Assembly (NCBI GenBank): GCA_047495785.1
Contig: JBLDXI010000007.1
Coordinates: 3,348,001 to 3,412,000 of the forward strand
DNA: 64,000 nucleotides
Direction of reading: 5' to 3'
DNA from: Lepidodermella squamata
Lineage: Eukaryota > Animalia > Gastrotricha
Position numbers and translations under genes: made by a program. The notes beneath the pieces were generated by a model that made no database searches, was not told the origin of the DNA, and saw only the letters and a program-made list of their open reading frames with translations. Below, one piece after another: positions 3,286-50,269 of this stretch (positions are counted from its first letter, which is position 1; each line of letters starts with the position of its first letter).

Positions 3286-6200
3286 CTAGAATGCCACCAA
3301 AACTGCGTAGACGTTGATTACGAGGAAAATGTCGAAGTAGATGAAGAAGGCTGCGAGGTCCAACGCCCGAGCGAAGCAGATCTTCGCAGACGCTATTGAA
3401 ACGTTGACCTTCTTGGACATCAACTGCGGAAATTTCGCAGTTACAGCAAACATTGCAGCTTCATAAAGGGCGATCATTCCAGTGAGACCAGATAGGATCA
3501 ATACGTATTCGGCCATGAGGACTGACTCGGCTGTATCAGGAATCAGCCCTAAGACATCCGACTGGATCACAATCATGCTGAGTAGAAGGGTGCCAGCGAA
3601 TGCCGGACGATCAGGAACGTCCGGCTGAAAGATGAGCGATGAGAAACCCAGCGCCATAAGGATTGAACATGGCGCAAGCGAATTGATGAGATAAGGTATC
3701 GGTTTTCGAGTGAAGGCGACATTAAATCGCGTATAGCCTGATGTTCCATTTCTTCTAAGCAGAGAAGTAGTTATGCCATAGAGGGAACTCGACGACTTCA
3801 GTTTCCACATTTCGCTGTCGAAGGTTCCAGGAATTTCAAGGCGAACCCCGCCAAATGCGACAAATTTATCAGCTTCATCGAGGGCGAATGTGAAGTCACA
3901 AGCTTGTGAATCAAAGGGGAATTTACGAAGCTTCAAGACGCATTTGGACCGAAGTATCCCATACCTTATCCAATGGAAAAACAGCGTACGATTAGGGGTG
4001 GTTGGGTAGTAGACAACATGTATCTGCTCTTTGAATCCACTCTCCATGTAAAGGTCGTTAGTCGTGTTGGTGAATCGCAGGCTCGGGACCCAAAGCTGGC
4101 GTCTGTCAACCGCATATATGCGATCTGCATCATTTACTGCTGGAGCAGTAGTGTCACTAGAGCAGACGTTCACGACCCACTGAACCACAACACTTCCTGA
4201 TACTGATACTTGCCGAGCCTCGGCGTCGATATCATGCAGCCGATCCATCTCAAATGTCAGGAAAATTTGTGTTCCAATAGCCGGTGATCTGTTTGGAAAG
4301 CAGCGTACGTCTAAATATGAACTTTGTTTCATCAAATACCTGTTTCCTGTTTCTAGATTTTTGCATGGTTTCAAATCGTCGATCTCGAGCAAAGGGATGG
4401 CATAGCCATCGATCAAATTAGGTATAAAAAACTCCGAGCTGTTTGTTATGAAATCGTAAGTCCTGGGACCTAGCGTTGTAGGTAGATTGGTGGTGGATGC
4501 AGATGGCCCCAGGCTCCACAAACGAAAATTCGAAATTGTAGCATCTCCCTGAGTGCCGTTAATTCCATAAAGCATGATGCTAGCATTGCCTTTCGCAATC
4601 TGATTTGTGCTTAGGCCACTTGCATTTGCACTTGACAAAATGATCATCGAATTGGTATTATTGTCCTCAGGTAAAGGAACAAGAGCGACCTTGAGGAAAA
4701 CGCATTCGTGATATTAGCCAATTAATATTTGAACCAATTACTTACAGAGACTAGGTCGTTAACGCTTTGAACGATAATGCGAAAATATGCCGTGCCCGAA
4801 CTGTTGAAGACGTTGGTAATGGTAATAGACTCATAGTCGTACGATAGAGGCACGGTTTGGCTGATATTCACCACATTAGCGTCGTAGGCTAGGTATAGCT
4901 TTCCACCTATACCGATTTGCAGAGCCAGGTGAAGTCCATCATAATTGTCGAAGGTATCGGGACTAGCTGTAGCACGTCTCTTACGACCCGCCGTGCTCAT
5001 GCCTTCGAAAAAGTGCTTACAATAGCTATTTTAGGGTATTCATGTTGACTTACTGACGTCTGCTGGGTGGCCAGTGATAGCAAACACAAGGTATCCATAC
5101 GTGGCCCCAGTCGGGTCGTACTTACAGCTGACATCCATTTCGGCTCGGAATGGAACGTATCCCATCTCTGAAGGCAGCTTTTTGTCCAATAATGCCGATC
5201 CGTAATCAGCTGTTGGATAGGAATTGAGTAACACTCCAGTTTTGTTACTCTTTGCATTCGCTGTGACAGTGAATTTAGCCGTTGCGTTGACAGTTGAATT
5301 CGTGTCGTAAGATAGATGACCGAGGAAGGCCGGATGGCCAGACCATAGATAGGGCAATGGCATCGACTGCAAATTCGGCTCTGGGACCATATAACCTGGC
5401 ATTGGAGTTGATGTTGTCGTAGTAGTCGTTGATGTGGTTTTGGGGGTCGTAGTAGTAGTGGATGTAGATGTCGATGGGGTTGTACTTGTTTTTGTTGTTG
5501 AAGTACTTCGAGTCGTTGTTGTAGGGGTCGTCGTAGTTGTCGTGGTTGTCCTGGTAGTTGAAGTTGACGTAGTCGGAGTTGTTGCCGTGGTAGAAGTCGA
5601 TGTTGTCGGGGTGGTCGTTGTTGTAGTCGATGATGTAGTTGTCGGCGTCGTAGTTTTAGTGGTAGTCGTTGGAGTCGTGGTTGTGGTTGTTGTTGTTGTA
5701 GTTGTCGATGGAGTTGTCGTGGGGGTGGTTGTTGTAGTTGACGTAGCAGTCGGAGTTGTAGTCGTCGTTCTAGTTGTAGTTGAAGTTGTAGTAGATGGCG
5801 TCGTGGTAGTCGAAGACGTCGAAGCGCTCGCACTCAGTCTCCAAAAATAGAAATTTCTGATTAATGTATGGCCATGTTGGTAATTGCAGAAATTGTTGAT
5901 ACGCAGTTTCACAGTCGCAGTAGTCCAGATTGTGTTCATCCCGGTGATATTTACATAATCAACGCAAACCTTTGCCTGTAGGGTGCTTAGCGGGGCCATT
6001 GCTACAGTCAAGTTATCTCCAAATGCTTGGATTATCAGGCGAAAGCGAGCAGTTCCTGAAGAATCGAACAGCCCGGTACCACAACCCGGTGCCGTCGTTG
6101 CAACTATCGGAGAACACGGAACTTGGCAAGTTGAACTGATAAGTGTGGGGCTGAACAGTATTCGCATTCTCCCATCGTTCATCAGTTCTTGCCATACGGT

Positions 6201-6827
6201 GAAACCACGGAAATTTGACATGATATCGTAGCAGCCAGTACTGTCGGCTTTCAGGAATGAAGGGTGAGCTTAAGCTTAAGGTCGGATAATAAAAGTTCAC
6301 TCACTGGGATAATTCAGCGAGGTGCTGGAAAACATTACTCCGAGCCAACCAGGCGTACTGCTGGTATATGTTCCGTCGTAATTAGCAGTGACGTCCATCT
6401 CTGCGCGCCAATCCGTGGTCGTTGTAGGGAAGTACTGTCATGATTAAAATGGATTAGAATGCAGTCAATTCCTTGAGGAAAAAACTTACGGTATTAGCGG
6501 ACATTCGTCCGTAGTCGGCCGAGTCTGTAATGTCTCCAACTTGATAAGAGTCGGATAGTTGATTCGCGGAATTGAAAAGAGTGAATGTCTGTGAACCAGC
6601 AATGCTGGAGTTCGCCTGGTCAAACGACATGTTGGCTAAATATAATGCAGATCCAGAAAATAGATACGGCAAGGGTAATGTTGCCGTATCTGGCACGGGG
6701 GTTATTAGTGAAGCTATTAGACAAAATCAGTAAACAGTATTAGACGAAAACCTTCCATAAAGCCGTTAGCCTTACCCACTCCACTGGCTTGAATGATCAC
6801 GCATATCAGAAGCGCGTATAACTTCAT
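3286..6827 (-). CDS. Gene B: Cys-loop ligand-gated ion channel subunit with two extra N-terminal domains and a Thr-rich stalk (~1069 aa)
   Basis: Seven phase-consistent exons: 6827-6776, 6713-6490, 6434-6305, 6247-5054, 5002-4746, 4689-4340, 4288-3286. Signal peptide MKLYALLICVIIQASGVA; loop A LWVPS; Cys-loop CVLKLRKFPFDSQAC; pre-M1 RKP; M2 DRPAFAGTLLLSMIVI; four hydrophobic helices. Confidence 0.92.
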
Positions 6828-7129
6828 TTCAAATCTATAGCTAATCTGATGATTATTGGCGTTTCACAGCAAAATGGTCGAGAAACTTTGCCATTTACGA
6901 AAGTTTTTGTTGCCACGCACCTCCATATTAACGAACGAAAACACGGCAGAACTGCAAGAGTTTGCTTTAAGTTATTCCGTGGGCGTCTTTTTGCCAGCAG
7001 AAAAAGATCACGTCAAACACTTGCGAGTTTCAACTCGCACTTTGCATTGACTTCGGTCTTATATCCTCATGAAAGCTTTTGTGTGATCGATGTCGCAATC
7101 GTACAAACAAAAAATATATAAGCTACCAG

Positions 7130-7375
7130 GAAGGTATTCAAACCACGTGTGTACTTCTCTTTGTGTTGCATTTCGGTCTAGAGCTTCGCCTCCTCAAAAT
7201 CGACACCTGGAGTGAAACCCATCAGGGCGGTCGTGAAAGATAACAACTGCTCTTTGTTGAGATGCGTTGTCATCAATTGCGGCAGATCAATAGCTTTCAA
7301 GCGCGAGCCGAGTTCATGGCGTAGCTTCATGTCCTAAGTTTTAGCGCCGTCGATTTCTCGCACTTTTTCGACCAG
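7130..7375 (-). pseudogene. Decayed copy of the neprilysin last exon upstream of gene B
   Basis: Nucleotide similarity to 40680-40930 (e.g. aacaactgctc...caattgcggcagatcaatagctttcaagcgcgag), with indels. Confidence 0.75.
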
Positions 7376-11230: not shown

Positions 11231-14200
11231 CTAATACACCACCAGCGATGCATAGATGTTTAGGATCAGGAAAGCATCGATGCTAATGCAGAATATTGCA
11301 ACATCCATGGCTCGAGCATAGCTGATTCGTGCCTTGAAGAAAGCGAACCTTCCGTCATTTTCTAAAAGGTAGGTGTATCTGCAGGTAGCTGTGAACATTA
11401 TTGCAGCGTATAGGGTAATCATCGAACACAGCCCGCATAGAATCAGAATATACTCAGCCATGAGAACAGATTCCGAGGTTTCGGGAATCTTATCTAAAAC
11501 TTGGGATTGGATTACAATCATACTGAGAAGGAGCGTCCCGGAGAATGCCGGACGGTCTGGGCAGTCGGGATCAAAAAGCAGTGACCCAAACACAAGGGTC
11601 AGTATGATGGCACACGGCGCCATGTTGTTGATGAGGTACGGCGCAGGCTCACGGGAGAAGCCAACAGTGAAAATGGCATAGCCCGATGTTCCATTTTTTC
11701 GCAACGGCGATTTGGTAACGCCGTGTTTGTTAGACGCAGCATCAAATTTCCACATTTCGCTGTCGAACGAGCCGTCAAAGGCGAATCGCGAGCCGCCAAA
11801 GAACAGAAATTTATCAGCCTCGTCGAGCAGAAACGTGAAATCGCATTGCTGCGTGTCGAACGGGAATTTTCTCAGCTTCAATATGCATTTCGATGTCATC
11901 ATGCCGAGTCGTATCCAATGAAAAAACAACGTGCGATTCGGGCTCGTTGGGTAGTAAGCTATCTGGACTTGTTCCTTCCAGAACATTCCATTCTCCATGT
12001 ACAGGTCGGATGTTGTGTTGGCGAATCGGATGCTCGGAACCCATACATCACTGCGCTTGACTGTGTAAACACGATCGACTTCGTTCACATTAGGCGCCGT
12101 CACTTCTTTAGGACAATCAGTAACAGCCCATTGTACAAGCAGTTGAGTCCCAGCAGCTATCTCGCGAGCATTAGCATCGATGTCGAACAATTCTTTGAAC
12201 TCCAGAGTGATGAAAATCTGAGTCCCAACAGCCGGAGATCTAGGAAAAACAATTTACAGAAAAATCGGCATTTGAGCAAATTGCAGTACTTGACTCTGGA
12301 GTTGATGAATCTGCAACTCGTCAGGTCGCCCATTTTTACTAGCGGAACGAGATTACCGTCTATCAAGTTTGGAATATTGAAACTTGAAGTATTTGAGCTG
12401 AAGTCGTAAGTTCTTGCAGCAGCTGTGGTTGGCAGAGCTGTGGTTGATGGCGAGGATTTCAGTTCCCAGACCTTAAGGCTTCGAACTGTTACATCGGCGT
12501 TGGATCCGTTTATTCCGTACAGCTGAATCTTGGCTACACCGCTCGCGAGTTGATTCGCGCTGAATCCAGGGATACTGACATCGCTGAGGAGAATCGTGGT
12601 CGTGGCATTGTTTCCACTGCTGGGAGCGATGGCGACAGTGATTTTGTCGCCTAAACTCTGAATTACCAGTTTGAAATTAGCTAGTCCCGATCCATCAAAT
12701 ATGTTTAGCATTGGGCTGATAGAATTAACAAAATAATTCAGAGGGACAGTTTGGCTCGTGCTTGTCGGAACCGCTTCATAAGATAGGTAAGCGCTGCCGC
12801 CTTGACCGAGCTGAAGACATATATGAGCCCCGTCGAAATTGCTGAAACTACCCATGCGCCCACTGGAATCATTTGCTTAGAAAAACAAGAGGTTATAAAA
12901 TGTGGACGATAGCTCTGAATATTTAAAACCCACCTACAGATGCGGGTTGGCTGGTCATCCCCATCACGAAATAACCCGACGAATCTGGCTTGTAATCTGA
13001 AGTGAGTTCCATCTCGATTCGAAAGCCGTCGGAACTTAGACTTGTAGGCAGGTTTGCGCCGACAGTGGCCGATCCGTAATCGATTGATGGATTATCATCC
13101 AGTTTCAACCCAGCCGCGTCGAAAGCAGCGCCGCCCTGCAGAGAAACATATCCGCCCTGTTCGCTGAATGAGTTATTCGATAGATAAGCAGGGATGTCAG
13201 AGTGCATGTAAGGCAGCGCAAGTAAATTTAAATCAGGATGAAGTGATGAGCTGCTTTGCTGTTGGGTAGTTGATGCTTGTCGTGACGTTGTAGTAGGATT
13301 CAGGGTTGTCGAGATTGATGACGCAGCAATAGTTGATCCTTGAGATGACAGCGCAGCTGTCGAAGGCGTAAGAGTAGTACTCGAGCTTGCGGTGGCCGAA
13401 GTTGTTGCTAAGGGGGTTAACGTTGAAGTTGCTGATGATGTTGTTGCTGTGCTGGAGGTGGTCGAAGTTGGGGTAGTCGGTGTTGTCACACTGTTGGATG
13501 TCGTCGATGTTGTTGTTGTCGTGGTTGGAGTTGTTGACGGAATCGTAGTAGTCGATGTCGATGGGGGAAACGTAGTCGGATTAGTTGTCGGTGTTGATGG
13601 AATTGTTGTCGTTGTGCTTGAACTTGAGAAAAAACCAAAATAGATCAAGTATAGCTGTCCCGCTTTAGGGAAGACGAATGCAACGCCTTACAAATGTTAT
13701 TCTGAATTGGGATAGCTAACCCTAACAAATCGAAAAAAGCGCCCAAAACCATGTAGCAGTAAACAGGAGCCTAAAAAACCTGAATGACTAAAATAGCGGG
13801 TAAGAAAATCGAAATGATTAAATGATGAAATCCGCTAAGAAAATTGAGTTTGTGCAACTGCATTTGTGCAAATGATTTTATGCATAATCGTTTGTGCAAG
13901 TACAGGTAAATCCATCTGCTGACCACGCGTTATTATAGCCACCCGTATGACATGCACCAAATGACGCCTCATTAGTTGCATTTTCAAAAGATTATTACTT
14001 TTATAATGTATCTACTTCAGTTTTGATGATAACTGATAACAAAAAATAACTAAAAAAAGTTGCGCAAGTGAGGTTGCGCTGGTTGCGCGTGGGAGATAAC
14101 CATAGTAGATTGTAGGAGGCTCTTAGATTATGGAATCACTCAAATCCCTGTAAAACTAACTAGAACGCGTTATATGCAATATCGATTATCGAAAAAGTTT

Positions 14201-17200
14201 TCGTGCTGGACTAAGATAATCAGATTTTGCAATGATCGAAAACAGTTTACTATAAGAATTACGGTTGTATGCGAGCGAAGCGAGAAATTTGAAAAATGTG
14301 CTACACTGAAACTGATTTGGAAATAGCATTCACAGCTGCCCGGGAGCGAGACGAGGGGCGTATGCTCGCGAATTCGATAGAAAATTATGAATCTTCTGAC
14401 AAAAGCAGACTCTTCGCGGACGTGATTAACGGCGGCCCCTGTGACCACTGATCGTCAGCTACCCGTTAACCTAAGGGTCAAGCGGCTCCTCTGGTTGCGT
14501 CATTTCATGTCATCACAAGCCAACTACGAGCCAGTGGAGGAGGACAAATAAAAAAACTTCGTTAGTTACAAACTAATTTCATCGTTTCTTGTCCTACATT
14601 AGTAAAACTATATCAGCCTATCCGGGCGAAACAATATAATTTTATCGATCACTAGTCGAGAAAGAAGCCAATAGAAGCCCCAACACAAATACTGACTAAC
14701 TGTGAGACAGTTAAGCAGAAATTAGTTCAGCGACGTCACTTGAGCAGTGATAATTGAGCAGGAGACACTTTAGCAACCGCTACTTCAGCAGACGCTATTT
14801 CAGCAGACAGCACTTTAGCAGGTGAAAGTTCAGCAGAACTTAGTTCAGCATTTGCTACTTCAGCAAACAGCACTGAAGCAATCGACACTTCAGCCGAAGA
14901 CTTATGGGCAATGATATACTTGAGCAGAAGTCATTTCAGCAAACGACATTTTCTCAGTGTGAATTTGAGCAAAATGTAATCAAATATCGATGCTTAAGTG
15001 ACGTTGCTGAACTAAGTTCTGCTGATCTGTCTTACAACCGACTAACCTCGTCGATGTAGCTCTATTCAAGCATGATCCTTGAGGTGGAAAAGCTGGAGCA
15101 GTGGTCGTTCCCGATGTGAGGCCGAAAAAGAAAACCCGTCGCACTAGAGTATCTCCAAGGCCCCCTTGTGAACCCATTATACTAACTACTGAAAAGTAAG
15201 CCCCCATCACATCCGTGCTCATCGACGGGACAGGTAGGCCAACGAAACAGCTGCAAGTTTCCGTCGTAACACTAGCGGATAGTGGCGAAACAGCGACGCT
15301 AGCAAGGTCGTTTGCGACCTGAATAAAAAGCCGAAACTTGCTCGAGCCTGAACTGTTCAAGAAACGAGAGCTTCCACACGCAGGGACCGAAGTTGCATTC
15401 GGAGGATTGCCCGGAATCGGTTGTGACGTCGAATTTCTCGTCTGGTATGTAGAATACGCTAACCCGGATGGTTGCAGTTGAAAGGATATGAGAAGACCTC
15501 TCGGAATTCGAAATCGGTCAGCGCTCATCGCTCCGGGCGATGTAACTTGAAATAGGGAGGATAGGAGAATGGATCGCTGTGATTAACTAGAAAAACCTAC
15601 GATAAGTTGTGGATGATTCCGTAATGGCTACAGTGAACCAGCCCATCGATCTATTTGCCGGATACGTGATTTCGGCGTCAATTTCAATTCGAAAGTTGGC
15701 AGGTGAACAGATGTAACCCTGATGGAGAAAAAAAGGACCTAGCCACATAACCAATAGTCGAAAACTTACCAGCCCAGAGACGATGACACCTTGAACAATT
15801 TGGGGCGATATGCGCGCCAGTTGATACCCCGAGCCTGGGATTTCCTCCGCTCGTAACGGGTCGTAAGCGTTGGAGTTGAATGTCGTGGTTCCATTGACAT
15901 AATCGAAAGAGTTATCGTAATCGTAACAGACAGCACCCTGGAAGCCGTACGGAAGTGGGTAAGAGGTTTCGTCTGGGGTCGGGGTGCCAGCAAGTACTGT
16001 GAAAGAAATACAACATACTTTAGTTTGGATTCCCTGGGGAGGAGGAATGGTCTTCACATATAGTTTGGCAATACACTTTACATTGTCGAGCGCGACCGGA
16101 CACGCGAGATTATCACTAATTTTATTAAGCCAAGTGCGCACTCACTCGCGGCGTATTTGCAACACCTGTTTCAATCGCCCAATTTTTGAAAATACACTCA
16201 CAACTAGGACGCTGTTAAGTCGGTATTGATCGTGTTTTGCGACGGGGGTTCTGAAATTTATCCGCGCTATCCTAAGGTGCTAGGTGTTGCTATTGACAAT
16301 TTCAAGTTGTTTGATCTTGACGTGATATTGTCATTAACGGACCGTCATTGTCCGCTTACAATTTAGAGAGCGCGATATTGCTACACTTTTGTATGCACAA
16401 AGGCTCGATAGTGATTTACCGCTGCCGTCTCAGTTGTCAGTTGACTTAAGGAGGTGCCATTAGCTTCTATCTGTCACCTGCGCGCGTGTAACTTTGTGTC
16501 ATCTTATATCCCGCCGTGGGTCAGTTTTTTCATAACGCGCATGTAATTTATGAGTGTTCCATTGTGCGATTGCACGACGACCGGTTCTAAGCCATGGCCG
16601 CAGTCCAGCGTCAACGTTGGCAATAGTGCGCGAGAGGTGAGATTCATCAATGGATTGATGGCATTAAGAGCCTGTCCAATGTGTCATATTGGCTGACGAA
16701 GCTAAATGCTACTCTACAGCCTCTATATTCTCCTATCACTCATGACCGCATTCATCTTTGGTTCATTCGGAACCTCGATTCAAGCGGTCATTCGTGCAGG
16801 AAAAGTGTTTCTGTATTCCGTGCCGTCCGAGATTCCTTAATTCTTACTATTACCTATTTCGCAAAGAACCCATATCTTCAGCAACCATAGCATGCTGATG
16901 TTCCTGGAGAATTGTTATTCGGATATTCGGATTTTCGATTCGAAAAATATAACGACAGATATAGGCTGGTCTTAAAAGCGAGATGGCACGCAATACACGC
17001 AATTGGATTTTGGAACATATTTCGACGCCTAGTTTTTGCATTGTTGGTAAACAGACCATTAGTTACCTTGGAGCGATTCAATTAGGAACTTTTCCAGGCC
17101 ACCGCCCAATTTCCTGTTATACTTTCTGATCTCACCACAGCAATCGTTCAATCACAGTATAATTTTTGAAAATTGAATAAGTCTGTATTTGCTGTTCTCC

Positions 17201-20200: not shown

Positions 20201-22668
20201 TTCCCAGCCGATTCCTTTGAACTGGTTGAAGTTGAAACCAATCCCCATCGATTAAAATAAAAAAATAAAAATTTCATGATGGGGGATAGTGGGTATAGCG
20301 CGTGGAAAATCACCATTTTTTACATGTAAACATGTATGCGCGAGTTTCAAAAAGATCCGCCATAATGAAAATTTACGAAAATCAGCAAAAGAATTAAAAC
20401 TTCATGTTTCCAATAGGAGTTTCATCTCTGGTAACTCTATTCTCTATGATAGAGACACCCCAGCTCGGTCGGGCAGTAGAAAATTTTATGATTTCACTAG
20501 AATTATAGAAAAATAGTTATCTTCCATCATTTTGGTTTGGAACTTCGGTAATTAGAGAAATCCCGTTATGAGGCCAATGGAGGAGGAGTTTTGAAGCAAT
20601 TTCCGGCTAATCCTGACACAAAATCTTCAAAAATACCGTCAGCTAAAGCTCGCTGCGCTCGCACCCAGGTTTGAATTCACTCAAGTTGGAATTTGGCGAT
20701 TATTCAACGGCAGCTTATTGAAGGGTCGACCATCGACCTTATATATAGTGGATATACAAACCCAGCACTGATAATAGATCTGGCGCGATCCATGACTGAT
20801 ACCATTTCAGTTGCCAAGTCTTATCGGCATTGTGATTAAAAAAAGAGATGTTACCAATAACGGTACATTTGATATTTTTCTTGGTTTGGAGGTTTTTCAG
20901 ATCATTCCTGATGGCGAATCGTCAACAATTGCGCCTGCTAAAGCTCGCTTCGCTAAAGAAAAATGTGAGCAGTTTTAAGAGGATTTGGGACCTTTTTTTA
21001 CCCAAAAATTCAAAAAATGTCTCGCTTCGCTCGACGCATCGATTAAAATTGATAATAGTGTCCACCGATGTAAAGTGAAAGGTACTAGGTGCGCGAGCGA
21101 GCGCAATTTTTTCAGCTCTATATTAGGAACACACCAGCTTGAAAATCCTACTTCGCACACTGGTCGTAGTCGGAGTAGTCGTACTGGTAGAAGGGGTGGT
21201 TGTTGTAGTAGATGTGGTTGTCGGAGTCGTTGTGGTTGTGGTTGTGGTAGTTGTTGTCGACGGAGTTGTCGTTGTTGTTGTTGGTTTCTTCGTGGTAGTC
21301 GAAGTTGAAGTACTAGTGGTCGTCGACGTCGTAGAGGCAGTCGACGGGCTTGTGTTCAATGTCCAGAAGTAGACGTTTTTAATTCGAGCAACGCCAGTAT
21401 TCATCGCACAGAGACCATTGAGACGAAGTTTCGTTGAGCCACTTGACATGCTGACGTTCAACCCCACAACAGCCACGTCTTGGAAACTGTGCGGAGCACC
21501 GCTTATCGGTAACGGAACCATCACAACCTGCGAAATGTTGGCGATGCTTATAAATTATGTCCCAGGTGGATCAGCATAAACCGCTAAGCCCGAAATGTAT
21601 GTCAGCGTTAAATAAATGTTAAGGTAGGGGGCTTAAATTTTAGGAATTATGAAACTCAGAAACCGCATTATATCTTTTCATTTTAACTACTTCATAGTAT
21701 ATTCAATATAGTATAGGATTATGCTTTTCTAGATACAGTAATAGCGCATGCTTCCCCTGACGACTGGCGACTGAGAAATTTCTGCTACTGCTTACCCCGT
21801 GAACGTAATTATCATTTGAAGTAGGGTCTACGCAGCTATTGTTGATCTATCAACTGACAGTTAGCCTTTCGTCCGCAACCTGAAGGATGAGTCTATATAT
21901 GGTTGTTCCGCTTGAAGTAAACAAGCCAGCGCTAGTACCACCACAGGCTGCAGTCGATGTGTAATCGGGATTGCATGGCATTGTGCAGACTGCAGTCATT
22001 AAGGTGGGTTCGAACTGGACATAAGTCAGCCCACTCGGTTTCAACTCCTGTATCACATTGAGTCCTCGAATTGTTTCCACGTAGTCGAAATTGCATGTAT
22101 TGGTGGCTTAACGGAATAAACTGTCAAAAAACATATGCTAATGCTAAGCTTTGTTACTAAATCTGACTGCTCCGTCTGATAACAAGACCGAAAGCCAGCC
22201 CGTGCTAGACGCGGCTGTGTTGTACGTCGCAGTTATATCCATCTCAGCCCGCCAGTTGTTAGCAGTACCAGATGCAAGGTACTTGATAATAAATATATTG
22301 AAAACATAGACACTTGAGTTCAATCTACGTGTCAATTACTTGATCTGAAGAAATGCGACCAAAGTCATCGGTCGCTAAATTTCCCAGTAGATAGCCGTTT
22401 GAATTCTGGGTAACAATGCCGCGAGTAACGAACGTGATCGATGAAGAAATCGAGGAATTCGATAGGTCATAAGAAAAGCTCGGCACGTATGTCGCAGAGC
22501 CAGAATACAGGTATGGCAGGGCTAGGGAGCTGAGATCTGGAGTGGGATCCATCACCGCATCGATCCAGCCTGATTTCAACAGTTACATGACAGTTTAAAT
22601 AAACAAGGAAATTCTCACTAACAAATCTTAGCAAGGCATATAAGAACGAGAAATAGCTTGTGAAGCAT
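11231..22668 (-). CDS. Gene C: Cys-loop ion channel subunit with three extra N-terminal domains and two long Thr/Ser-rich stalks (~1380 aa)
   Basis: Eleven exons, all phase-compatible: 22668-22623, 22569-22340, 22281-22158, 22106-21859, 21527-21161, 15996-15770, 15718-15601, 15545-15047, 13622-12934, 12875-12290, 12239-11231. Signal peptide MLHKLFLVLICLAKICWIDA; Cys-loop CILKLRKFPFDTQQC; M2 PDRPAFSGTLLLSMIVI. The join across the 5.2-kb TE-filled intron is inferred from phase only. Confidence 0.8.
14701..15036. mobile_element. MULE-type MITE with TIRs, internal ~20-bp repeats and 10-bp TSD
   Basis: TIR tgtgagacagttaagcagaaattagttcagc vs inverted gctgaactaagttctgctgatctgtcttaca; flanking direct repeat actgactaac (14691-14700) / accgactaac (15037-15046); internal cacttcagca-like repeats. 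Confidence 0.75.
16290..17260 (+). mobile_element. Possible heavily decayed LINE (endonuclease-like remnants)
   Basis: Only fragmentary motifs such as NFVSSYIPPW (resembles the APE YRPP motif); no intact frame. Confidence 0.25.
18060..19085 (-). mobile_element. CR1/L2-clade LINE reverse transcriptase fragment (frameshifted)
   Basis: Minus-strand translations WSTVTSGVPQGSVLGP, FFADDTKL, VKDLGITVDKHLTFSEH, LEAVQARFTKRL, LEIRRFQHDL. Confidence 0.9.
18626..18817. mobile_element. Small MITE inserted into the LINE fragment
   Basis: Termini ccgttaatcc / ggattaacgg; duplicated ATTAA at 18621-18625 and 18818-18822; interrupts the RT reading frame. Confidence 0.7.
19237..19308 (+). pseudogene. tRNA-Gly-derived pseudo-tRNA or SINE head
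   Basis: GCATTGG/CCAATGC acceptor stem, AGTGGTA D-loop, GGTTCGAATCCC T-arm and a downstream T-run. The anticodon stem has two mismatches and the anticodon reads GTA instead of GCC. Confidence 0.65.
19548..19626 (-). other. Orphan first-exon-like segment related to A-type exon 1
   Basis: ATG...AGA T|gtaagt, 79 nt, phase 1; sequence similar to 2255-2300 and 24560-24626. Confidence 0.45.
19690..20091. mobile_element. Foldback MITE with ~110-bp inverted arms
   Basis: 19690-19802 is a near-perfect reverse complement of 19980-20091. Confidence 0.8.
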
Positions 22669-28400: not shown

Positions 28401-29028
28401 TACGGTGAAACCTCGGAAATTTGCCATGATATCGTAGCAGCCACTATAGTCGGCTATAGATAATAACGAATTTAAGATGAACCCGTGGTGGAAAAATCAA
28501 GGTAAAGTCACTCGGGTAATTCAGCGAAAGGCTTGAGAACATAACACCAAGCCAACCAGGCGTGCTGCTGGAATATGTTCCGTCGTAAAAAGCGGTAACG
28601 TCCATTTCAGCGCGCCAATCCGTAGTCGTCGTAGGGAAGTACTTACGTGAAAAATAAGCAATCTCATGCAGTCAATCCATTGAAGAAAAAACTTACCGTA
28701 TCTGCAGAAATTCGCCCGTAGTCAGTCGAGTCTGTAATGTCTCCAACTTGATAAGAATCGGACAATTGATACGCAGAATCGTAAAGAGTGAACGTCTGTG
28801 AACCAGCAATGCTCGCGTTCGTCTGGTCAAATGACATGTTGGCCAAATACAACGCAGATCCAGAAAAAAGATACGGCATAGGAAATGTTGTAGTATCTGG
28901 TACGGGGGTTATTAGTGAAGCTATAAAGCATAATCAGTAAACAGACGAAAACTTTCTAGAAACACATGAGCCTTACCCACTCCACTAGCATGAATGATCA
29001 TGCCCATCAGAAGAACTTGTAAATTCAT
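25462..29028 (-). CDS. Gene D: two-extra-domain Cys-loop receptor, close paralogue of B
   Basis: Same 7-exon layout as B; signal peptide MNLQVLLMGMIIHASGVA; ORF pieces 28664-28879, 27213-28427, 26893-27213, 26487-26831, 25462-26436; Cys-loop CVLKLRKFPFDSQTC. Confidence 0.92.
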
Positions 29029-35235: not shown

Positions 35236-35500
35236 GTCCAATAATGAATAATGCCGATCCGTAATCAACTATTAGATAGGAATTGAGTATGACCACAGCG
35301 TTGTTACTCTTTGCATTTGCGGTGACAATTAATTTAGGCGTTGCGTCGATAGTTGAATTTGTGTCATAGGATAGATGACCGAGGAAGGTCGCATGGCCAG
35401 ACCATTGATGTTGTCGTAGTAGTCGTTGATGTAGTTGATGTTGTTGATGTTGCTGATGTAGGTGTAGTCGGTGTTGTTGTCGTAGTTGAAGTTATTGTTT
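35236..35500 (-). pseudogene. Fragment of a B-type channel gene (Thr stalk and start of domain 2)
   Basis: Translates as TTT...WSGHATFLGHLSYDTNSTIDATPKLIVTANAKSNNAVVILNSYLIVDYGSAL, with an internal deletion; lies next to the large TIR element. Confidence 0.85.
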
Positions 35501-36408: not shown

Positions 36409-39400
36409 TTAGAACGCTACTATAACTGCGTAGACGTTGATAACGAGGAAAATGTCGAAGTAGATGAAGAAGGCTGCGAGGTCCATCGCTCGAGCATAGC
36501 AGACCTTCACAGCTGCAATTGATACTTCGACCTTTTTTGACATTAAAAGCGGAAATTTCGCAGTTGCTGCAAACATTGCGGCTTCATAGAGGGCGATCAT
36601 TCCAGTGAGGCCAGATAGGATCAAGATGTATTCGGCCATAAGAACGGACTCCGCTGTATCAGGAATCAGCCCTAGGACATCTGACTGGATCACAATCATG
36701 CCTAGCAGAAGGGTGCCAGCGAATGTTGGACGATCTGGAACATCAGGCTGAAATATGAGCGAAGAGAATCCCAGCGCCATTAGGATTGAACAGGGTGCAA
36801 GAGAATTGATGAGATACGGTATTGGTTTTCGAGCAAAGGCGACATTAAATCGGGTATAACCCGATGTACCATTTCGTCTTAGCAGAGAAGACGTGATGCC
36901 ATAGAGGGAACTCGACGACTTTAGTTCCCACATTTCGCTGTCGAAGCTTCCAGGAATTTCAAGGCGAACCCCGCCAAATGCGACAAATTTATCAGCTTCA
37001 TCAAGGGCAAACGTAAAATCACATGTTTGTGAATCAAAGGGAAATTTCCGAAGCTTCAAGACACATTTTGACCGAAGCATCCCAAATCTCATCCAATGGA
37101 AAAACAGCGTGCGATTAGGGGTCGTTGGGTAGTAGACAACATGTATCTGCTCTTTGAATCCACTCTCCATGTAGGTGTCAGAAGTCGTATTGGTGAATCG
37201 CAAGCTCGGGACCCATAGCTGGCGTCTGTCAACTGCATATATACGATCTGCGTCATTGACTGCTGGAGCGGTAGTGTCACTTGGGCAGTCGTTAACGACC
37301 CACTGAACCACAACACTTCCCGAGATCGAGATTTGCCTAACCTGGGGATCGATATCATTCAGCTGATCCATCTCAAGAGTCAGGAAAATCTTTGTTCCAA
37401 AAGCTGGTGATCTGTTTGAAAACAGCTGTTTGAAATGACGTCTAAATATGACATATTAAGTCGTCTGATAAACCTGTTTGCTGTTTCTAAATTTTTGCAT
37501 GGTTTCAAATCGTCGATCTCGAGCAAAGGGATGATATTGCCGTTGATCAAATTTGGTATCAAAAACTCCGAGCTGTTTGTTATGAAATCATAAGTCCGAG
37601 GCCCTAGGGTTGTTGGTAGATTGGTGGTGGATGCAGATGGCCCCAGGCTCCACAGACGAAAATTCGAAACAGTAGCATCTCCTTGAGTGCCGTTAATTCC
37701 ATAAAGCATGATATTAGCATTGCCTTTTTCAATTTGATTTGTGCTTAGGCCACTTGCATTCGCATTGGACAAAATGATCATCGGATTTGTGTTGCTGTCT
37801 TCGGGTAGAGAAACAAGGGACACCTTGAGGAAAACACAGTCAGTTAAATTAGGAAAATTTTATACGAGTTCTTACAGAGACCAGATCGTTAACGCTTTGA
37901 ACGATAATTCGGAAATAGGCCGTGCCCGAACTGTTGAAAACGTTAGTAATTGTGACAGACTCATAGTCGTACGATAGCGGGACCGTTTGGCTGATATTTA
38001 CCACATTGGCATCGTAGGATAGGTACAGCTTCCCACCAATACCGATTTGCAGAGCCAGGTGAAGTCCATCATAGTTGTCGAATCTATCGGGACTAGCTGT
38101 GGCCCGTTTCTTTCGACCCGCTGTGCTGATACCTTTGAAAAAGTTATTTTGAAGGTATCAATAGGTATCAATTTTGCATCCACGTTGACTTACTGACGTC
38201 TGCTGGACGGCCAGTGATAGCAAACACAAGGTATCCATACGTAGCCCCTGTCGGGTCGTATCTGCAGCTGACATCCATTTCGGCTCGGAATGGAACGTAT
38301 CCCATACCTGACGGCAGCTTTTTGTCCAATAGTGCTGATCCGTAATCAGCTGTTGGATAGGAATTGAGTATCACCCCAGTTTTGTTACTACTTGCGCTAG
38401 CCGTGACTATGAATTTAGCCGTTGCGTTGATAGTTGAATTTGTGTCGTAGGACAGATGGCCGAGGAAGGTCGGATGGCCAGACCAAAGATAGGGCAATGG
38501 CGTCGACTTGACATCCGGCTCTGGCACCAAGTACCCTGGCATGGGAGTTGATGTGGTAGTTGTTGTAGTAGTAGTGGATGTAGAAGTCGATGGGGTTGAA
38601 GCAGTTTTTGTTGTTGATGTTGACGTAGTCGGGGTTGTGGTTGTTGTTGAGGTCGAGGTTGTTGGGGTAGTAGTCGTAGTCGATGATGTAGTGGTCGGTG
38701 TCATAGTCTTCGTGGTAGTCGTCGGAGTCGTGGTTGTGGTCGACGTAGTCGTCGGGGTAGTGGTACTGGTTAAGACCGTGGTTGTTGTCGTAGACGTGGT
38801 TGTTGGGGTAGTTGTAGTTGTAGTTGGCGTTGTCGAGGGAGTGGTAGTTGTAGGGGTTGTTGTCGTCGTTCCAGTTGTTGTTGGAGTTGTCGATGGTGTC
38901 GTTGTAATCGAAGAAGTTGAAGCACTAGGACTCAGTTTCCAAAAGTAGAAATTTCTGTTGTATGTGTGGCCATGTTGATAATTGCAGAAGTTGTTGATAC
39001 GCAGTTTCACAGTCCCAGAAGTCCAGATTGCATTCATCCCCGTTACATTTACGTAGTCAACACAAACTTTGGCCTGCAGGGTACTCAACGGCGCCATTGC
39101 CACAGTCAAGCTCTCTCCAAATACCTGTATTATCAGGCGAAATCGAGCAGTTCCTGAGGAATCGAACAGCCCGGTGCCACAACCCGGGGTCGACGTTGCC
39201 ACTATTGGAGAGCATGGTGCTTCACATGCTGAGCTGATAGCTGTGGGGCTGTAAAGTATTCGCATCCTTCCACCGTTCATAAGTTCTTGCCATACGGTGA
39301 AACCACGGTGATTTGACATGACATCTAAGCAACCAGCTGTGTCGGCTTCATAGGGGATAATGACGAATTCAAATTAAACTGAGTGAGGGGGATTCAAGGC

Positions 39401-39926
39401 AAACTCACACGGATAGGTCAGTGAGGTGCTGGAGAACATAACCCCAAGCCAACCAGGCGTAATGCTGGTATATGTCCCGTCGTAAGAAGCGGTAACGTCC
39501 ATCTCGGCGCGCCAATCCGTAGTCGTTGTGGGAAATTTCTTTTAGACCAAAATTGAATAGTATGGAGTCAATTGCTTGTTGAAACTTACGTTACTTCCAG
39601 AAATCCGACCGGTGTCGAGCGGGTCAGTGATGTCTCCAACTTGATAAGAGTCGGACAACTGATACGCGTCATCGTAAAGCGTGAATGTCTGTGAACCAGC
39701 AATGCTCGAGTTCGCCTGGTCAAACGACACGTTGGCTAAATACAATGCAGAGCCAGAAAATAGATACGGCATAGGAAATGTTGCCGTATCTGGTACAGGG
39801 GTTATTTGAGAAACTGTTAAGCAAAATCAGTAGACAGTATGAGGCGATTTTTTTAAGAAACACGTGAACCTTACCAACACCACCAACATGAATGAGCACG
39901 CATATCAGAAACGCGAAGAACTTCAT
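36409..39926 (-). CDS. Gene E: two-extra-domain Cys-loop receptor, close paralogue of B and D
   Basis: Same 7-exon layout; signal peptide MKFFAFLICVLIHVGGV; ORF pieces 39542-39772, 38168-39319, 37380-37823, 36409-37371; M2 PDRPTFAGTLLLGMIVI. Confidence 0.92.
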
Positions 39927-40340: not shown

Positions 40341-40544
40341 TACTGCGATTTGGAGAATCAGAGCGCTAATGGTTTAAAGTTTATTTTTGGTTCTCCGTCA
40401 TTAAATGTACAAACTTATTTTAATAAAAACCGAGGATATCAGGAACATTTCCTGTTTTCGGGGAAATCACAAAAGAAGTAGAAAAGAATCACACGAAAAT
40501 TAATCAGTTATAATTTCTGATGTTAGGGTTCTGATGTTTCATTT

Positions 40545-43323: not shown

Positions 43324-44096
43324 GGATTTTGAATAATAACTTCATTAATCGCTTCATTTATTTTGTGAGAAAATTGGCATGAATAATGAATGCGGATATC
43401 CTTTTCGTGGGTATGAACTTCATTGCTCTTTTTCGCACGTGTTTTGTTCCCATTGTGAACCTGGGTAATAAAATTGATGCGCCACACCACTACTGTTTTT
43501 CATGTGTTTGATACAGGTCTGTTTTTTCATGATCTCTTGTTTATGTGTTTCTCCCCTCCCTCGTGATTTTTGCACTAGACGCAATAAAGCGGTGGTAATT
43601 ACAAATCCTACCTGTATGTTCATAAAAATCACGTTGTAAGTTCTTTATTGTAGCAAATCATGCTATTTTTCTCTTGAACAGAGGTCGGAGGCAGAGATAT
43701 TACGGATTTCAGCCATGTTCCGTATTAACCTTTCAGCGGCTTTTTCTTCAGGATATAATCGAAAAATTGGTTTGATAAATAACAACTTTTACAACATCGA
43801 GAATAATGACGATTAGGGGGTTTGGAAACCGGATTCCGGAAATACCTATTACCTATCACCTATACATGCTACCGTAATTCGACCTCAAGGTATTTGTGAA
43901 ATGAATTGTGGGACAAAGTATTGCTCGTATGAGCTGTTTTCTTAGTTGAGCGGGAAGATGCAGCCGCGCACTCATAAATAAACTCAGTTTCCGGAATGGC
44001 GAAATTTAAGAAGCTCAGACCGATCAAGGAAATGTGCAGCCTCACTCAGTTTTATTAACACAGTGCTTTTTATTCGTCGATTTACACAAATATCAA

Positions 44097-47595: not shown

Positions 47596-50269
47596 CTAGG
47601 CGGTAAAGGCTACAAAATAGGCGTAAACATTGACTGCAAGGAATGCGTCGATTGAAAATAGGAAAACAGCCAGATCAAAGGCTCGGGCGATACTCAGTGG
47701 TTTCAAACAAGAAGGCAATTCACGCTTCCGATGCATCATCCATTGAAAGCGAACCGCCATAGCGTAGATAACCGTTTCGTACAACGTAATCACACCGGTG
47801 AGCCCGGCTAGAATTAGAATATACTCAGCCATCAGGACCGATTCGGACGTTTCAGGAATCAGTTGCATAACATCAGATTCAATAACAATCAAGCTCAAGA
47901 GAAGGGTAGCTGAGAAGGCAGCCCGATCAGGCACATCTGGCTGAAATAGAAAAGACCCAAATACCAGCAAAAGGAGGATCAGAGACGGTGCGAGACTGTT
48001 AACCAAATATGGAGCTGATTTTCTCGAAAATGTTACTGTAAATCGAGCGTATCCGGATGTTTGCTTCTTGCGCATAAGAGACCTTGTCGTTCCATACATC
48101 GAGCTAGCGGATTCAAGATTCCACAGCTCACTTTCGAATGAGCCATCAAAAGCCAGCTGTGTGCCTGCTACATTCAAAAACTGATCAGATTCCTCGAGTA
48201 CAAATGTGAAATCACATTGCTGCGAGTCGAACGGGAATTTACGAAGCCTCAAGAGACACTGAGCATTTAAGATACCGAAGCGTAGCCAGTGGAAAAACAA
48301 TGTGCGATTAGGCGTTGTTGGGTAGTATACAATCTGAACCTGTTCTCGAAATCCAGTCTCCATGTATATATCGGTGGACGTATTGGCAAAGCGAAGGAAA
48401 GGAGTCCATACATCACCCCTATCAACAGTGTATATACGATCAGGATCTGAAACCCCGGGCGCAGTAATATCGGCTGGACAAGATGTAACAGTCCACTGAA
48501 CTAACAAGCATCCGCCGACGGATATCTCGCGAGCTTTAGCATCAATGTCGACCAAACGCTGCATTTCCAAGGTAACGTAGACTTTCGTTCCAAACGATGG
48601 AGACCTTCAATAATAAAGTAAAAAGTAATACGATATCACGGAGTTTGAATCACGAATATTACTTGGCCAGTGGGCTTATGGATTTGCATGGCTTCACGTC
48701 CTCAACAGATATTTTGGGAAGTATGTTGCCGTCTATCATTTCTGGGATTGGGAAATTGTAGTCGTTTTTCTCGAACGTATAGGTAGCTTCATGCTTTGTA
48801 GTCGATGGAAGTTCAGCTGGGGTACTGATCAAAGTACTTGTCGATTGCGTGGTTGTCGTAGTCGAAGAACTAATTGACGGACTTGTGGTTCTTGTAGTGG
48901 TCAAAGGGGCGGTACTGCTCCACTGGGTTGGGCTTGTTGTCGAGCTAGATTGAGTTGTAGTCGGTTTAGTTGTAGTACTGGTTGGGGGCGCTGCAGAAGT
49001 CGTCGACGCTGTTGTCGTAGGCTTAGTAGTAGTGGTTGTCGTAGTACTAGTTGATGGAGCGGTAGTCGAAGTTGAAGGCGCTGTGGAAGTCGTAGTAGGC
49101 TTAGTTGTGGTAGTTGATGAAGTACTGGTTGAAGTTGAAGGCGTTGTAGAAGTAGAGGGCGTTACTGTTGTTGTCGTTGTAGGTATCGCAGTAGAAGTAG
49201 TTGTAGTAGTGGTGCTCGATGTTGAAGGGCTTGATGCAAGATTCCAGAATCTGAAGTTCTCCATATTATAGTACCCTCTATTGTGATTGCAAAAGGTCAT
49301 TGCTCTTAGCTTCACATTTCCTGAAGCTAAAATAGCTTTGAATCCGGGGATGCTCACGTCGCTGAAGCATGTCGAGACCTGTGAACCAGACGCGATCCCA
49401 ACAGATAGCATCTCGCCGTAAACTTGAAATATCATTTTGTAATTTACATTTCCAGTCGAGTCTAAGATGGTTCCGCCACAGCCGGGTGATGATGTTGCAA
49501 TAATTGGCGAACACGGTAAATGGCAAGCTGATGATGTGGTGGTTGTATACCATACATAGGCCTTTCCGTTGGGCATCAGCTCTTGTAACACGCTGACTCC
49601 CTGAACGTACTGAATTTGATCATAGCAGCCACTAGTTGGGTCTACGATACAATTATTTACAATTTTAAGCCTAGAGGTTAGAGTCATACTAACTGGGGTA
49701 GGCGGGCGAGCTACTTGAGAATACCATCGCGAGCCAAGCCCTTGAAGATGCATTATTGCTGGCACTGTAAACTGCTGTAATGTCCATTTCAGCTCGCCAG
49801 TTCTCAGCGCTCGCATCAAGATACTGATAGGAATAAAATTTGCAATTTTTCAACCTTGAGATGCATCGTTTCAGTTGTTCCCAGAATGTACTGGGCGTTC
49901 TCACGTTTCAGCCTTTTTGAACTCAGAATGATTACGCATTTTTCCTTACCTGGTCTCCAGAGATTCTGCCATACTCCTTTGTAGAGCTGATGTCCCCTAT
50001 TTGGTAAGTGTTGCCCAAATCAGCAGAATCATCATACAGAGTGACTGTCATAGATTGCGAAACACTCGAATTGGCTTGATCGAAGGATAATCCAGATTTG
50101 TAAGTCGCAGTTCCGGCATACAGGTAGGGCAGCGGGAAGCTCGTAACATCAGGTGTTGGAGTGATCAGCGAACCTAAGAATTTCGATTTCATTCAACATC
50201 ATGCTAGCTGTAAAACTCACCTGAGCTACTGATACTGGTCATCATTGTCAGAGAAATGAGTAGAAACAT
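47596..50269 (-). CDS. Gene F: Cys-loop receptor with one extra N-terminal domain and a Thr-rich stalk (~796 aa)
   Basis: Five phase-consistent exons: 50269-50221, 50173-49950, 49823-49694, 49641-48663, 48604-47596. Cys-loop CLLRLRKFPFDSQQC; M2 PDRAAFSATLLLSLIVI. Confidence 0.92.

What the first reader, a model, noticed from the sequence alone, without database searches (positions are those of the whole stretch)
3286..50269. Tandem family of Cys-loop channels carrying 1, 2 or 3 extra extracellular domains on mucin-like stalks
Seen: at least five intact genes splice a signal peptide, copies of a ~200-aa domain and roughly 70-135-aa Thr-rich linkers onto a Cys-loop LBD + 4TM. Copy number is modular: F has 1, B/D/E have 2, C has 3. 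Known: classical animal pLGICs (nAChR, GABA-A, GlyR, 5-HT3) start the LBD right after the signal peptide; the bacterial channel DeCLIC has jelly-roll N-terminal domains; cephalopod chemotactile receptors are tandem-arrayed nAChR-like sensory channels without such extensions. Inference: a pentamer would display 5-15 binding domains on O-glycosylated stalks, which suits a contact-, glycan- or tether-gated sensory or recognition channel. This is the best candidate for an undescribed system in the window.
Basis: partly seen in the sequence, partly recalled or inferred. Interest (0 to 1): 0.95.

Follow-up and report, generated by a model that had tools for sequence, protein, structure and literature searches.

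The report
Lectin-headed, mucin-stalked Cys-loop channel family
This animal's genome holds a large family of nicotinic-receptor-type ion channel genes whose subunits carry one to three extra lectin-fold heads on a sugar-coated stalk. Channel structure papers say animals lack such extra domains, although the lobster genome paper reported a different version.

Summary
On the minus strand I built four complete gene models. B, D and E have 1055-1077 aa and two extra domains; F has 796 aa and one. Each has a signal peptide, extra domain(s), a 137-158-aa Thr-rich linker and a Cys-loop LBD with 4 TM helices. The exons are joined by canonical 47-126-nt GT-AG introns at conserved phases.

Gene C is intact with two domains. 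A third domain needs an unverified 5.1-kb intron.

The fusion does not depend on my splicing calls. Paralogs elsewhere in the genome encode domain, stalk and channel in one uninterrupted ORF, and two metagenome contigs from other organisms show the same order.

The extra domain is about 260 aa and has no Pfam match. A full-length single-ORF homologue folds as an L-type (legume/ERGIC-53/VIP36) lectin (Z 19). Sugar binding is not shown.

Domains come in a membrane-proximal type and a distal type. All parts are under purifying selection (dN/dS 0.07-0.25). The genome holds at least 123 such channel exons.

No RNA evidence could be obtained here.

This scan has already flagged the same family at many other places in this genome. 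The lobster genome paper (2021) reported Cys-loop receptors with C-type-lectin, pentraxin and LDLa domains. I therefore rate this a new variant of a known kind, with function untested.

The parts
47596..50269 (-). Gene F, 796 aa, 5 exons (50269-50221, 50173-49950, 49823-49694, 49641-48663, 48604-47596). Order: signal peptide, one distal-type lectin-fold domain, Thr/Ser-rich stalk (49246-48815), pre-LBD segment, LBD + 4 TM.
36409..39926 (-). Gene E, 1055 aa, 7 exons. Order: signal peptide, distal domain, Thr-rich stalk (38938-38528), proximal domain with an RKKR site, about 20-aa linker, pre-LBD, channel exon 37411-36409.
25462..29028 (-). Gene D, 1077 aa, 7 exons, same layout as E. Stalk 28046-27573; channel exon 26464-25462.
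11231..15996 (-). Gene C core, 1041 aa without a stop and with no start of its own. Order: domain (15996-15047, two small introns), putative 1.4-kb intron (15046-13623), Ser/Thr-rich stalk, proximal domain (13240-12451), channel exon 12239-11231.
21152..22668 (-). Signal peptide + distal-type domain + Thr-rich stretch, ending at a phase-1 donor. Either the first exons of gene C, joined across a 5.1-kb intron that holds a LINE remnant, or an orphaned 5' module.
   Evidence: phase match only, no transcript
3286..6827 (-). Gene B, 1069 aa, 7 exons (6827-6776, 6713-6490, 6434-6305, 6247-5054, 5002-4746, 4689-4340, 4288-3286). Stalk 5840-5388; RKRR site at aa 540. The last intron (51 nt) is in frame, so the ORF 3289-4713 reads through it.
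1358..2300 (-). 5' part of gene A (distal domain). The gene continues to the left of the window into its proximal domain and its channel exon (L013:5172-6173).
35249..35404 (-). Isolated remnant of a proximal-type N-half. A channel scrap also lies at 24260-24337. Both are debris of former family members.

Best explanation
SHOWN. The window holds part of a very large, tandemly expanded, lineage-restricted family of animal-type Cys-loop receptor subunits. Each polypeptide reads, from the outside in:
- a signal peptide;
- one to three domains of about 260 aa with an L-type (legume / ERGIC-53 / VIP36-like) lectin fold;
- a Thr/Ser/Pro-rich mucin-like stalk of about 140-160 aa;
- a short conserved pre-LBD segment;
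- a complete ligand-binding domain and four TM helices, with an invariant 9' Leu and a near-invariant -1' Asp in M2.

INFERRED. Five subunits form a probably cation-permeable channel. The N-termini emerge at the top of the extracellular domain, so 5-15 lectin-fold heads would be displayed, the distal ones on extended, probably O-glycosylated stalks. The most likely role is a chemosensory or pattern-recognition ionotropic receptor. In that model the heads capture large external ligands (glycans, or other ligands as in plant L-type lectin receptor kinases) and so localise or allosterically tune the channel. This is how N-terminal domains act in the bacterial channel DeCLIC and in glutamate receptors. 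Membrane-proximal heads sit about 20 aa from the channel and could touch it. Distal heads act as reach-out antennae.
For: One polypeptide:
- Conserved GT-AG introns and phases, with no stops.
- The channel exons have no start codon or signal peptide of their own.
- Paralogs have domain C-half + S/T linker + LBD + TM in a single ORF of 551-710 aa.
- 28 of 30 sampled channel exons have modules upstream on the same strand (the sample is biased).
- dN/dS is 0.07-0.25 with dS 0.26-0.94 (mostly 0.4-0.75) in every segment.
- Metagenome contigs L028 and L029, from other organisms (GC 0.385 and 0.364), show the same order of parts.

Lectin fold:
- P0001 is a single-ORF homologue of the whole domain. 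The C-half matches at E 2.6e-7 library-wide. The N-half gives hhalign probability 95.8%, E 7e-9.
- ESM Atlas places P0001 with legume lectins: feature score 0.94, TM 0.65-0.69.
- The AF2 model has pTM 0.75.
- The Foldseek top 50 are all L-type lectins, best E 5.6e-8.
- VIA-align gives VIP36 Z 19.1, ERGIC-53 Z 18.6 and peanut lectin Z 18.5. The best non-L-type ConA-like fold scores 14.7 or less.

Channel:
- Pfam PF02931 match.
- AF2 model with pLDDT 79 and four TM helices.
- The top 50 PDB matches are all animal Cys-loop receptors, E about 1e-17.
- Invariant columns of alignment A4: R278 = 0', L287 = 9', D277 = -1' (the numbering is my own reading).

Family size and modularity.
Against: - No transcript evidence at this locus.
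- The lectin fold was modelled on a metagenomic homologue only about 22-25% identical to the window's copies, not on a window copy.
- Neither Pfam nor a PDB sequence search detects the domain.
- By eye, the Asp equivalent to ERGIC-53 Asp121 is kept only in the proximal-type domains (YDGL). The loop carrying Asn156 has no clear counterpart (plus my reading). Canonical Ca2+-dependent mannose binding is therefore doubtful.
- A half-domain from the window gives only weak, mixed ConA-like hits in the Atlas.
- Nothing shows pentamer assembly, ion flow, O-glycosylation or any coupling between heads and gate.
Confidence: 0.6

Rival explanations
1. The heads and stalk are anchoring or spacing modules, not sensors. 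They would tether or cluster the channel in a glycocalyx, cuticle or matrix, or mediate adhesion. Gating would be by an unknown small ligand at the ordinary inter-subunit site.
For: The LBD is complete and under strong constraint. The canonical sugar-site residues look poorly conserved (plus my reading). The same domain + mucin stalk also sits on a single-pass membrane protein with no channel (L020), which fits a general surface-display or adhesion module.
Against: Anchors rarely diversify into well over a hundred tandem paralogs with position-specific domain types. Loop B and loop C lack the acetylcholine-type aromatic Trp and the vicinal Cys pair (my reading), so no known transmitter site is evident either.
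Confidence: 0.25
2. The heads are shed. The RK(K/R)R site in the proximal domain of B, D and E would be cut by a furin-type protease. That would release a soluble lectin-mucin and leave a channel with a neo-N-terminus, as a tethered-ligand or maturation mechanism.
For: RKRR/RKKR is conserved in B, D and E, right after an intron within the proximal domain.
Against: The site is absent from F and C. It lies inside a beta-sandwich, whose halves would probably stay together after a cut. The site is common by chance in basic loops.
Confidence: 0.07
3. The stalk acts as a mechanical tether. Force on the heads, bound to an external surface, would pull on the top of the extracellular domain and gate the channel.
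For: Only the geometry: long stalks attached to the N-terminus at the apex of the ECD.
Against: Mucin stalks are flexible and transmit force poorly. No pLGIC is known to be force-gated. In 2-domain genes the stalk is separated from the channel by a whole domain.
Confidence: 0.04
4. The exons belong to separate genes or pseudogenes, and the fusion is an artefact of reading raw DNA.
For: There is no RNA evidence here.
Against: Single-ORF fusions exist in paralogs and in other organisms. Introns of 50-62 nt leave no room for a promoter or a poly(A) site. The channel exons lack a start codon and signal peptide. Purifying selection acts on all parts.
Confidence: 0.03

Closest known systems
Lobster 'chimeric' Cys-loop receptors (Polinski et al. 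2021, PMC8221624)
   Same: Animal Cys-loop LBD + TM subunits carry extra N-terminal recognition-type domains. The family is strongly expanded (66 genes). It is known from genome and expression data only, and a neuro-immune or chemosensory role has been proposed.
   Different: The lobster domains are C-type lectin, pentraxin and LDLa, all of which Pfam recognises. Here the domain is an L-type lectin fold that Pfam does not see. It is combined with a long Thr-rich stalk and comes in position-specific proximal and distal types. The paper calls the design unique to lobster and related crustaceans. Whether this genome is a crustacean's is unknown to me.
DeCLIC and other prokaryotic pLGICs with N-terminal domains
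   Same: A pentameric channel with extra beta-sandwich domains N-terminal to the ECD. In DeCLIC these influence gating kinetics (PMC9897478). This is the best available model for how the proximal heads might work.
   Different: DeCLIC is bacterial, has a Pro-loop and no stalk, and its two jelly-roll lobes pack directly on the ECD. Here there is a true Cys-loop, the nearest structures are animal receptors, the fold is L-type lectin, and the distal heads sit on mucin stalks. [quoted passage not shown]
L-type lectins (ERGIC-53, VIP36, Emp46/47p, legume lectins)
   Same: The fold is the same: Z 16.8-19.1 over 197-215 residues. A GLAIW-like strand motif is recognisable by eye.
   Different: There is no sequence-level match. 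The sugar and Ca2+ site is not demonstrably kept. The distal type has six extra Cys. The domain sits on a plasma-membrane channel rather than on a sorting receptor.
Plant L-type lectin receptor kinases (from my own knowledge)
   Same: An L-type lectin fold serves as the ectodomain of a large, fast-expanding receptor family. Many members have lost sugar binding and sense other ligands.
   Different: The output module is a kinase, not an ion channel, and the kingdom is different. This is an analogy only.
Cephalopod chemotactile receptors (from my own knowledge)
   Same: Tandemly expanded, divergent nicotinic-like subunits used for contact chemosensation.
   Different: They have no extra N-terminal domains or stalk.

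Membership tests
Cys-loop / pentameric ligand-gated ion channel superfamily | Neur_chan_LBD profile match above the curated cut-off | tested here: met
   PF02931 scores 29.4-37.5 bits against a cut-off of 26 on three channel exons.
Cys-loop / pentameric ligand-gated ion channel superfamily | Cys-loop of two Cys 13 residues apart, with the FPFD motif | tested here: met
   CVLKLRKFPFDSQAC and variants are present in B, C, D, E and F.
Cys-loop / pentameric ligand-gated ion channel superfamily | Beta-sandwich ECD followed by four TM helices; fold match to solved receptors | tested here: met
   Tested on a paralog. The AF2 model has pLDDT 79 and helices at 247-268, 277-299, 304-336 and 355-383. The top 50 PDB hits are all animal Cys-loop receptors, E about 1e-17.
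Cys-loop / pentameric ligand-gated ion channel superfamily | Pentameric assembly and ligand-gated current | not testable with these tools
   Needs expression and electrophysiology.
L-type (legume-like) lectin domain | Legume-lectin beta-sandwich fold | tested here: met
   Tested on homologue P0001, not on a window copy. VIP36 Z 19.1, ERGIC-53 Z 18.6, peanut lectin Z 18.5. The Foldseek top 50 are all L-type lectins. Atlas TM 0.65-0.69. Homology of P0001 to the window's domains.
L-type (legume-like) lectin domain | Sequence-profile membership (PF00139, PF03388 or PF18483) | tested here: not met
   No Pfam hit even at E up to 10. No PDB sequence hit.
L-type (legume-like) lectin domain | Sugar and Ca2+ site (Asp121, Asn156, Gly251/252 of ERGIC-53; PMC3912170) | tested here: inconclusive
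   Comparison by eye only. The Asp of the xDGL strand is present in proximal-type domains (YDGLHLAL, FDGAHICL) but is R, Q, H or K in the distal type and in P0001. No clear Asn156 loop is seen. No residue-level structural alignment was available.
Lobster-type chimeric LGIC | CLECT, pentraxin or LDLa domain fused to a Cys-loop receptor | tested here: not met
   None of these Pfam families hits the upstream exons. It is the same kind of design with a different domain.
DeCLIC-type NTD pLGIC | Prokaryotic Pro-loop channel with jelly-roll NTD lobes packed on the ECD | tested here: not met
   A Cys-loop is present and the nearest structures are animal receptors. The NTD is separated from the channel by a mucin linker.
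Mucin-like domain | Long Ser/Thr/Pro-rich stretch; dense O-glycosylation | tested here: inconclusive
   The composition criterion is met: 137-158 aa, 63-67% Thr and about 90% S/T/P in B, D and E. Glycosylation cannot be tested here.

The most novel reading that the evidence does not exclude
These are a new class of animal ionotropic pattern-recognition receptors. Binding of a glycan or other macromolecular ligand to the lectin-fold heads would directly gate a Cys-loop channel. Hundreds of head variants would give a combinatorial contact-chemosensory or immune repertoire.
Probability: 0.2. Interest if true: 0.9.

Novelty: new variant of a known kind. Interest (0 to 1): 0.62.

Why it matters
Structural papers on this channel family state that extra N-terminal domains are confined to bacteria (PMC9897478). 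One genome paper reports lectin-type fusions in lobster.

This genome adds a second, different and much larger case. The head is an L-type lectin fold on a mucin stalk. It comes in one to three copies with position-specific types. The family has well over a hundred genes, and relatives occur in environmental samples.

If the heads influence gating, this would be a direct link between recognition of large molecules and fast electrical signalling. It would also give a natural eukaryotic system for asking what accessory domains do to a pentameric channel. Even if the heads only anchor the channel, the family is a major unannotated receptor repertoire of this animal lineage.

Tried and rejected
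- Three word-indexed protein searches (channel + partial domain; channel region of a 710-aa ORF; P0001) found nothing for the channel and only two close kin of P0001. The tool's length and word limits mean this is weak evidence of absence.
- Profile search of 1.84 billion representative proteins with the domain C-half gave only 4 weak hits, all unnamed metagenome ORFs.
- Reads. The only two runs offered are short DNA-like contigs. One shows many strand-flip joints. Among the joints listed (8 more were not shown) none skips an intron. There is therefore no RNA evidence for or against.
- Pfam finds nothing on any piece of the extra domain. A PDB sequence profile search also finds nothing.
- Alignment A2 placed N-halves on C-half columns, so I discarded it. 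A3 was used instead.
- I could not fold a window copy of the domain. The fold rests on homologue P0001.
- Atlas features of one window half-domain gave mixed ConA-like-clan hits with low shared-feature counts. I rate this inconclusive.
- The pre-LBD segment is modelled with low confidence (pLDDT 35-50), so I say nothing about how the stalk joins the ECD.
- Complex prediction was not used; a pentamer exceeds its size limit.
- The organism was not identified, so I cannot say whether it falls within the lobster paper's 'related crustaceans'.
Full report
**What is in the window**

The window is eukaryotic DNA with very short introns (GC about 0.43). It corresponds to G000:C7:3348001-3412000 in a 121-Mb assembly.

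Five minus-strand exons of about 1 kb each encode a complete Cys-loop receptor body. Pfam Neur_chan_LBD scores above its cut-off. Each has a C-x13-C loop with FPFD and only about 25 residues between M3 and M4; the AF2 model of a paralog shows four TM helices. None of these exons has a start codon or a signal peptide of its own. Each begins at an AG acceptor in the motif (R/K)SPxxGT.

**Gene models**

I read the three frames around every junction and assembled four complete genes:
- B 6827..3286, 7 exons, 1069 aa
- D 29028..25462, 7 exons, 1077 aa
- E 39926..36409, 7 exons, 1055 aa
- F 50269..47596, 5 exons, 796 aa

All introns are GT-AG. They are 47-63 nt long, with one of 126 nt, and sit at the same positions and phases in all paralogs.

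Each protein starts with a 16-17-aa signal peptide. It continues into one extra domain (F) or two (B, D, E), then a Thr-rich stretch, then a conserved pre-LBD segment (FPIP..IDGN..P....DL..C), then the channel.

The Thr-rich stretches are 137-158 aa in B, D and E, with 63-67% Thr and about 90% S/T/P. F has 144 aa.

In the two-domain genes the long stalk lies between the two domains. The proximal domain is only about 20 residues from the pre-LBD segment.

Gene C has an intact 1041-aa core with two domains. It has no start of its own and needs a 1.4-kb intron. A module of signal peptide + domain + Thr-rich stretch at 22668-21152 ends in a phase-1 donor that matches C's phase-1 acceptor at 15996. 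Joining them would need a 5.1-kb intron that contains a LINE remnant. So 'C has 3' is possible but not shown.

Gene A straddles the left edge of the window.

**Is it one polypeptide?**

RNA evidence could not be obtained. The two runs on offer are short DNA-like contigs, and none of the joints listed skips an intron. Four other lines of evidence answer the question.
1. Elsewhere in the same genome, single uninterrupted ORFs of 551-710 aa contain the C-terminal half of the domain, an S/T-rich linker, the pre-LBD segment, the LBD and the four TM helices (L001-L007). No splicing assumption is needed there.
2. I built HMMs for the domain N-half, the domain C-half and the channel. On 27 fetched loci plus the window they give the co-oriented pattern [N-half, C-half]n + channel nearly everywhere. 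The value of n is 1, 2 or, in L017, 3. Of 30 complete channel exons, 28 have modules upstream. The sample is biased because the loci were chosen from hits.
3. Between B, D and E, dN/dS is 0.07-0.25, at dS 0.26-0.94 (mostly 0.4-0.75), in each of six segments: distal domain, linker, proximal domain, pre-LBD, LBD and TMD.
4. Two metagenome contigs from other organisms (GC 0.385 and 0.364) show the same order of parts: signal peptide, two domains, S/T linker, pre-LBD, LBD, 4 TM.

**Size of the family**

The channel exon of F finds at least 123 full-length, mostly stop-free matches in the genome (E 1e-62 or better), out of 2138 first-look candidates. The domain C-half finds at least 138 matches, many directly upstream of channel exons.

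A tree of C-halves separates two types. A membrane-proximal type (support 94/92) holds every module that lies next to a channel in multi-domain genes. A distal type (95/82) holds the outer modules, plus the single modules of the one-domain genes of this cluster. The two outer modules of the three-domain gene are close relatives, so the third copy arose by duplication of the distal one.

Distal domains carry six conserved Cys; proximal ones carry one.

**What the extra domain is**

Pfam does not recognise any piece of it, and a PDB sequence profile search finds nothing. A profile of the C-half searched against 1.84 billion representative proteins found only four weak hits, all unnamed metagenome ORFs.

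The best hit, P0001 (263 aa), is a signal peptide plus one complete domain in a single ORF. On its contig it is the first module of a channel gene with this same architecture. Its homology to the window's domains holds for both halves:
- C-half: E 2.6e-7 library-wide, 1e-14 locally.
- N-half: hhalign probability 95.8%, E 7e-9.

Evidence for the fold of P0001:
- The ESM Atlas holds P0001 and places it with legume lectins, both by features (0.94, ten of ten top hits) and by structure (TM 0.65-0.69 over 214-222 residues).
- My AF2 model, built with alignment A3, has pLDDT 69 and pTM 0.75.
- Foldseek's top 50 PDB matches are all L-type lectins: Emp46p, the Entamoeba lectin-like domain, VIP36, ERGIC-53 and legume lectins. 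The best E is 5.6e-8.
- The independent VIA-align search gives VIP36 Z 19.1 (rmsd 3.1 Å, 207 residues), ERGIC-53 Z 18.6 and peanut lectin Z 18.5. Other ConA-like folds start at Z 14.7.

The fold is therefore L-type lectin. Lectin activity is not shown. ERGIC-53 binds mannose through Asp121, Asn156 and Gly251/252 next to Ca2+ loops (PMC3912170; sequence checked). By eye, the ADGLAIW strand has counterparts: FKGLAIW in P0001, YDGLHLAL in proximal domains and FRGFTVW in distal ones. The Asp survives only in the proximal type, and I see no counterpart of the Asn156 loop. This is an unaided reading and I rate it inconclusive.

**The channel**

An AF2 model of a paralog that has pre-LBD and channel in one exon (L004, alignment A4) has pLDDT 79, the ten-strand ECD and four TM helices. 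Its 50 best PDB matches are all animal Cys-loop receptors: alpha7 nAChR, GABA-A beta3, GluCl and GlyR. E is about 1e-17 and identity about 15%. No bacterial channel is among them.

Across 25 paralogs the invariant columns include the Cys-loop and a PTxPNRTLxFxW motif peculiar to this subfamily. They also include M2 positions that I read as R0', L9' and P23'. D at -1' is nearly invariant. By the standard rule for this family, an acidic -1' residue predicts cation selectivity. That is an inference.

I see no loop-C Cys pair and no loop-B Trp, so an acetylcholine-type site is unlikely (my reading).

**Mechanism**

Shown: the architecture, the lectin fold of the heads, the two positional domain types, purifying selection, the large expansion, and occurrence in other organisms.

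Inferred: pentamers display 5-15 heads above the vestibule; the stalks are O-glycosylated; the heads capture large external ligands and localise or tune the channel. The last point is by analogy with the N-terminal domains of DeCLIC (PMC9897478) and of glutamate receptors.

The main rival is that the heads only anchor or space the channel. The same domain + stalk also sits on a single-pass membrane protein (L020), and that fits the rival. Shedding at the RK(K/R)R site of B, D and E, and mechanical gating, are minor rivals.

**What is known**

The lobster genome paper reports 66 Cys-loop receptors with C-type lectin, pentraxin or LDLa domains and calls them unique to lobster and related crustaceans (PMC8221624).

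Channel-structure papers still state that N-terminal domains are not observed in eukaryotic homologues. Jaiteh et al. deliberately trimmed the termini in their survey (PMC4795631).

No paper in the library combines pentameric channels with L-type lectins.

This scan has flagged the same family at many other loci of this genome. Earlier follow-ups could not show the lectin fold. The present work adds that, together with the single-ORF fusions, the selection test and the proximal/distal domain types.

**Verdict**

This is a real, ordinary-looking coding family with an unusual design. It is a new variant of a known kind. Its function is untested.

Noticed in passing
L020:2989-5313 (+) = G000:C48:1082989-1085313: A 775-aa single ORF carries the same lectin-fold C-half and a Thr-rich mucin stretch. 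These are followed by a Cys-rich region, one TM helix and a Pro/Gln-rich tail. So the head + stalk module also serves a non-channel, single-pass membrane protein.
   Followed up: partly
window 44034-46475 (+): An 813-aa single-exon ORF with an ANF_receptor ligand-binding region (E 1e-17), followed by hydrophobic helices. It is a family C (mGluR/GABA-B-like) GPCR on the opposite strand, lying between channel genes E and F.
   Followed up: partly
window 40548-43341 (-): A multi-exon M13 (neprilysin-like) peptidase gene (Peptidase_M13 E 6e-23; M13_N E 8e-6) between gene E and the GPCR.
   Followed up: partly
window 30674-32727 (-): MULE transposase domain plus SWIM zinc finger, with an Arg/Gly-rich tail. 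This is a Mutator-like transposon copy inserted between genes D and E.
   Followed up: partly
window 16141-21126 (-): A degenerate LINE-like reverse-transcriptase remnant in the same orientation as the channel genes. It lies exactly in the gap that would be gene C's 5.1-kb intron.
   Followed up: partly
window 55180-56313 (-) and 56872-59077 (-): A NEMP-family nuclear-envelope membrane protein ORF (E 2e-23) lies next to a 565-aa Cys-rich ORF with no Pfam match. Two ORFs at 52784-54778 (one with a weak DUF7869 hit) lie nearby. Earlier notes on this genome describe transposons that carry NEMP-like genes.
   Followed up: no
G000:C23 versus C54 (for example C23:1344785-1345690 and C54:402040-402945; L006 versus L007): Channel genes occur as near-identical collinear pairs on two contigs. 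These are either haplotigs or a recent large segmental duplication, and they inflate simple copy counts.
   Followed up: no
L028:4066-5028 (+): The metagenome contig that carries the lectin-channel relative also carries a second, more conventional pLGIC exon directly downstream.
   Followed up: no
Here every channel exon also lacks a signal peptide, because the signal peptide sits in a small exon 2.6-3.6 kb upstream. That locus should be rechecked for upstream exons.
   Followed up: no
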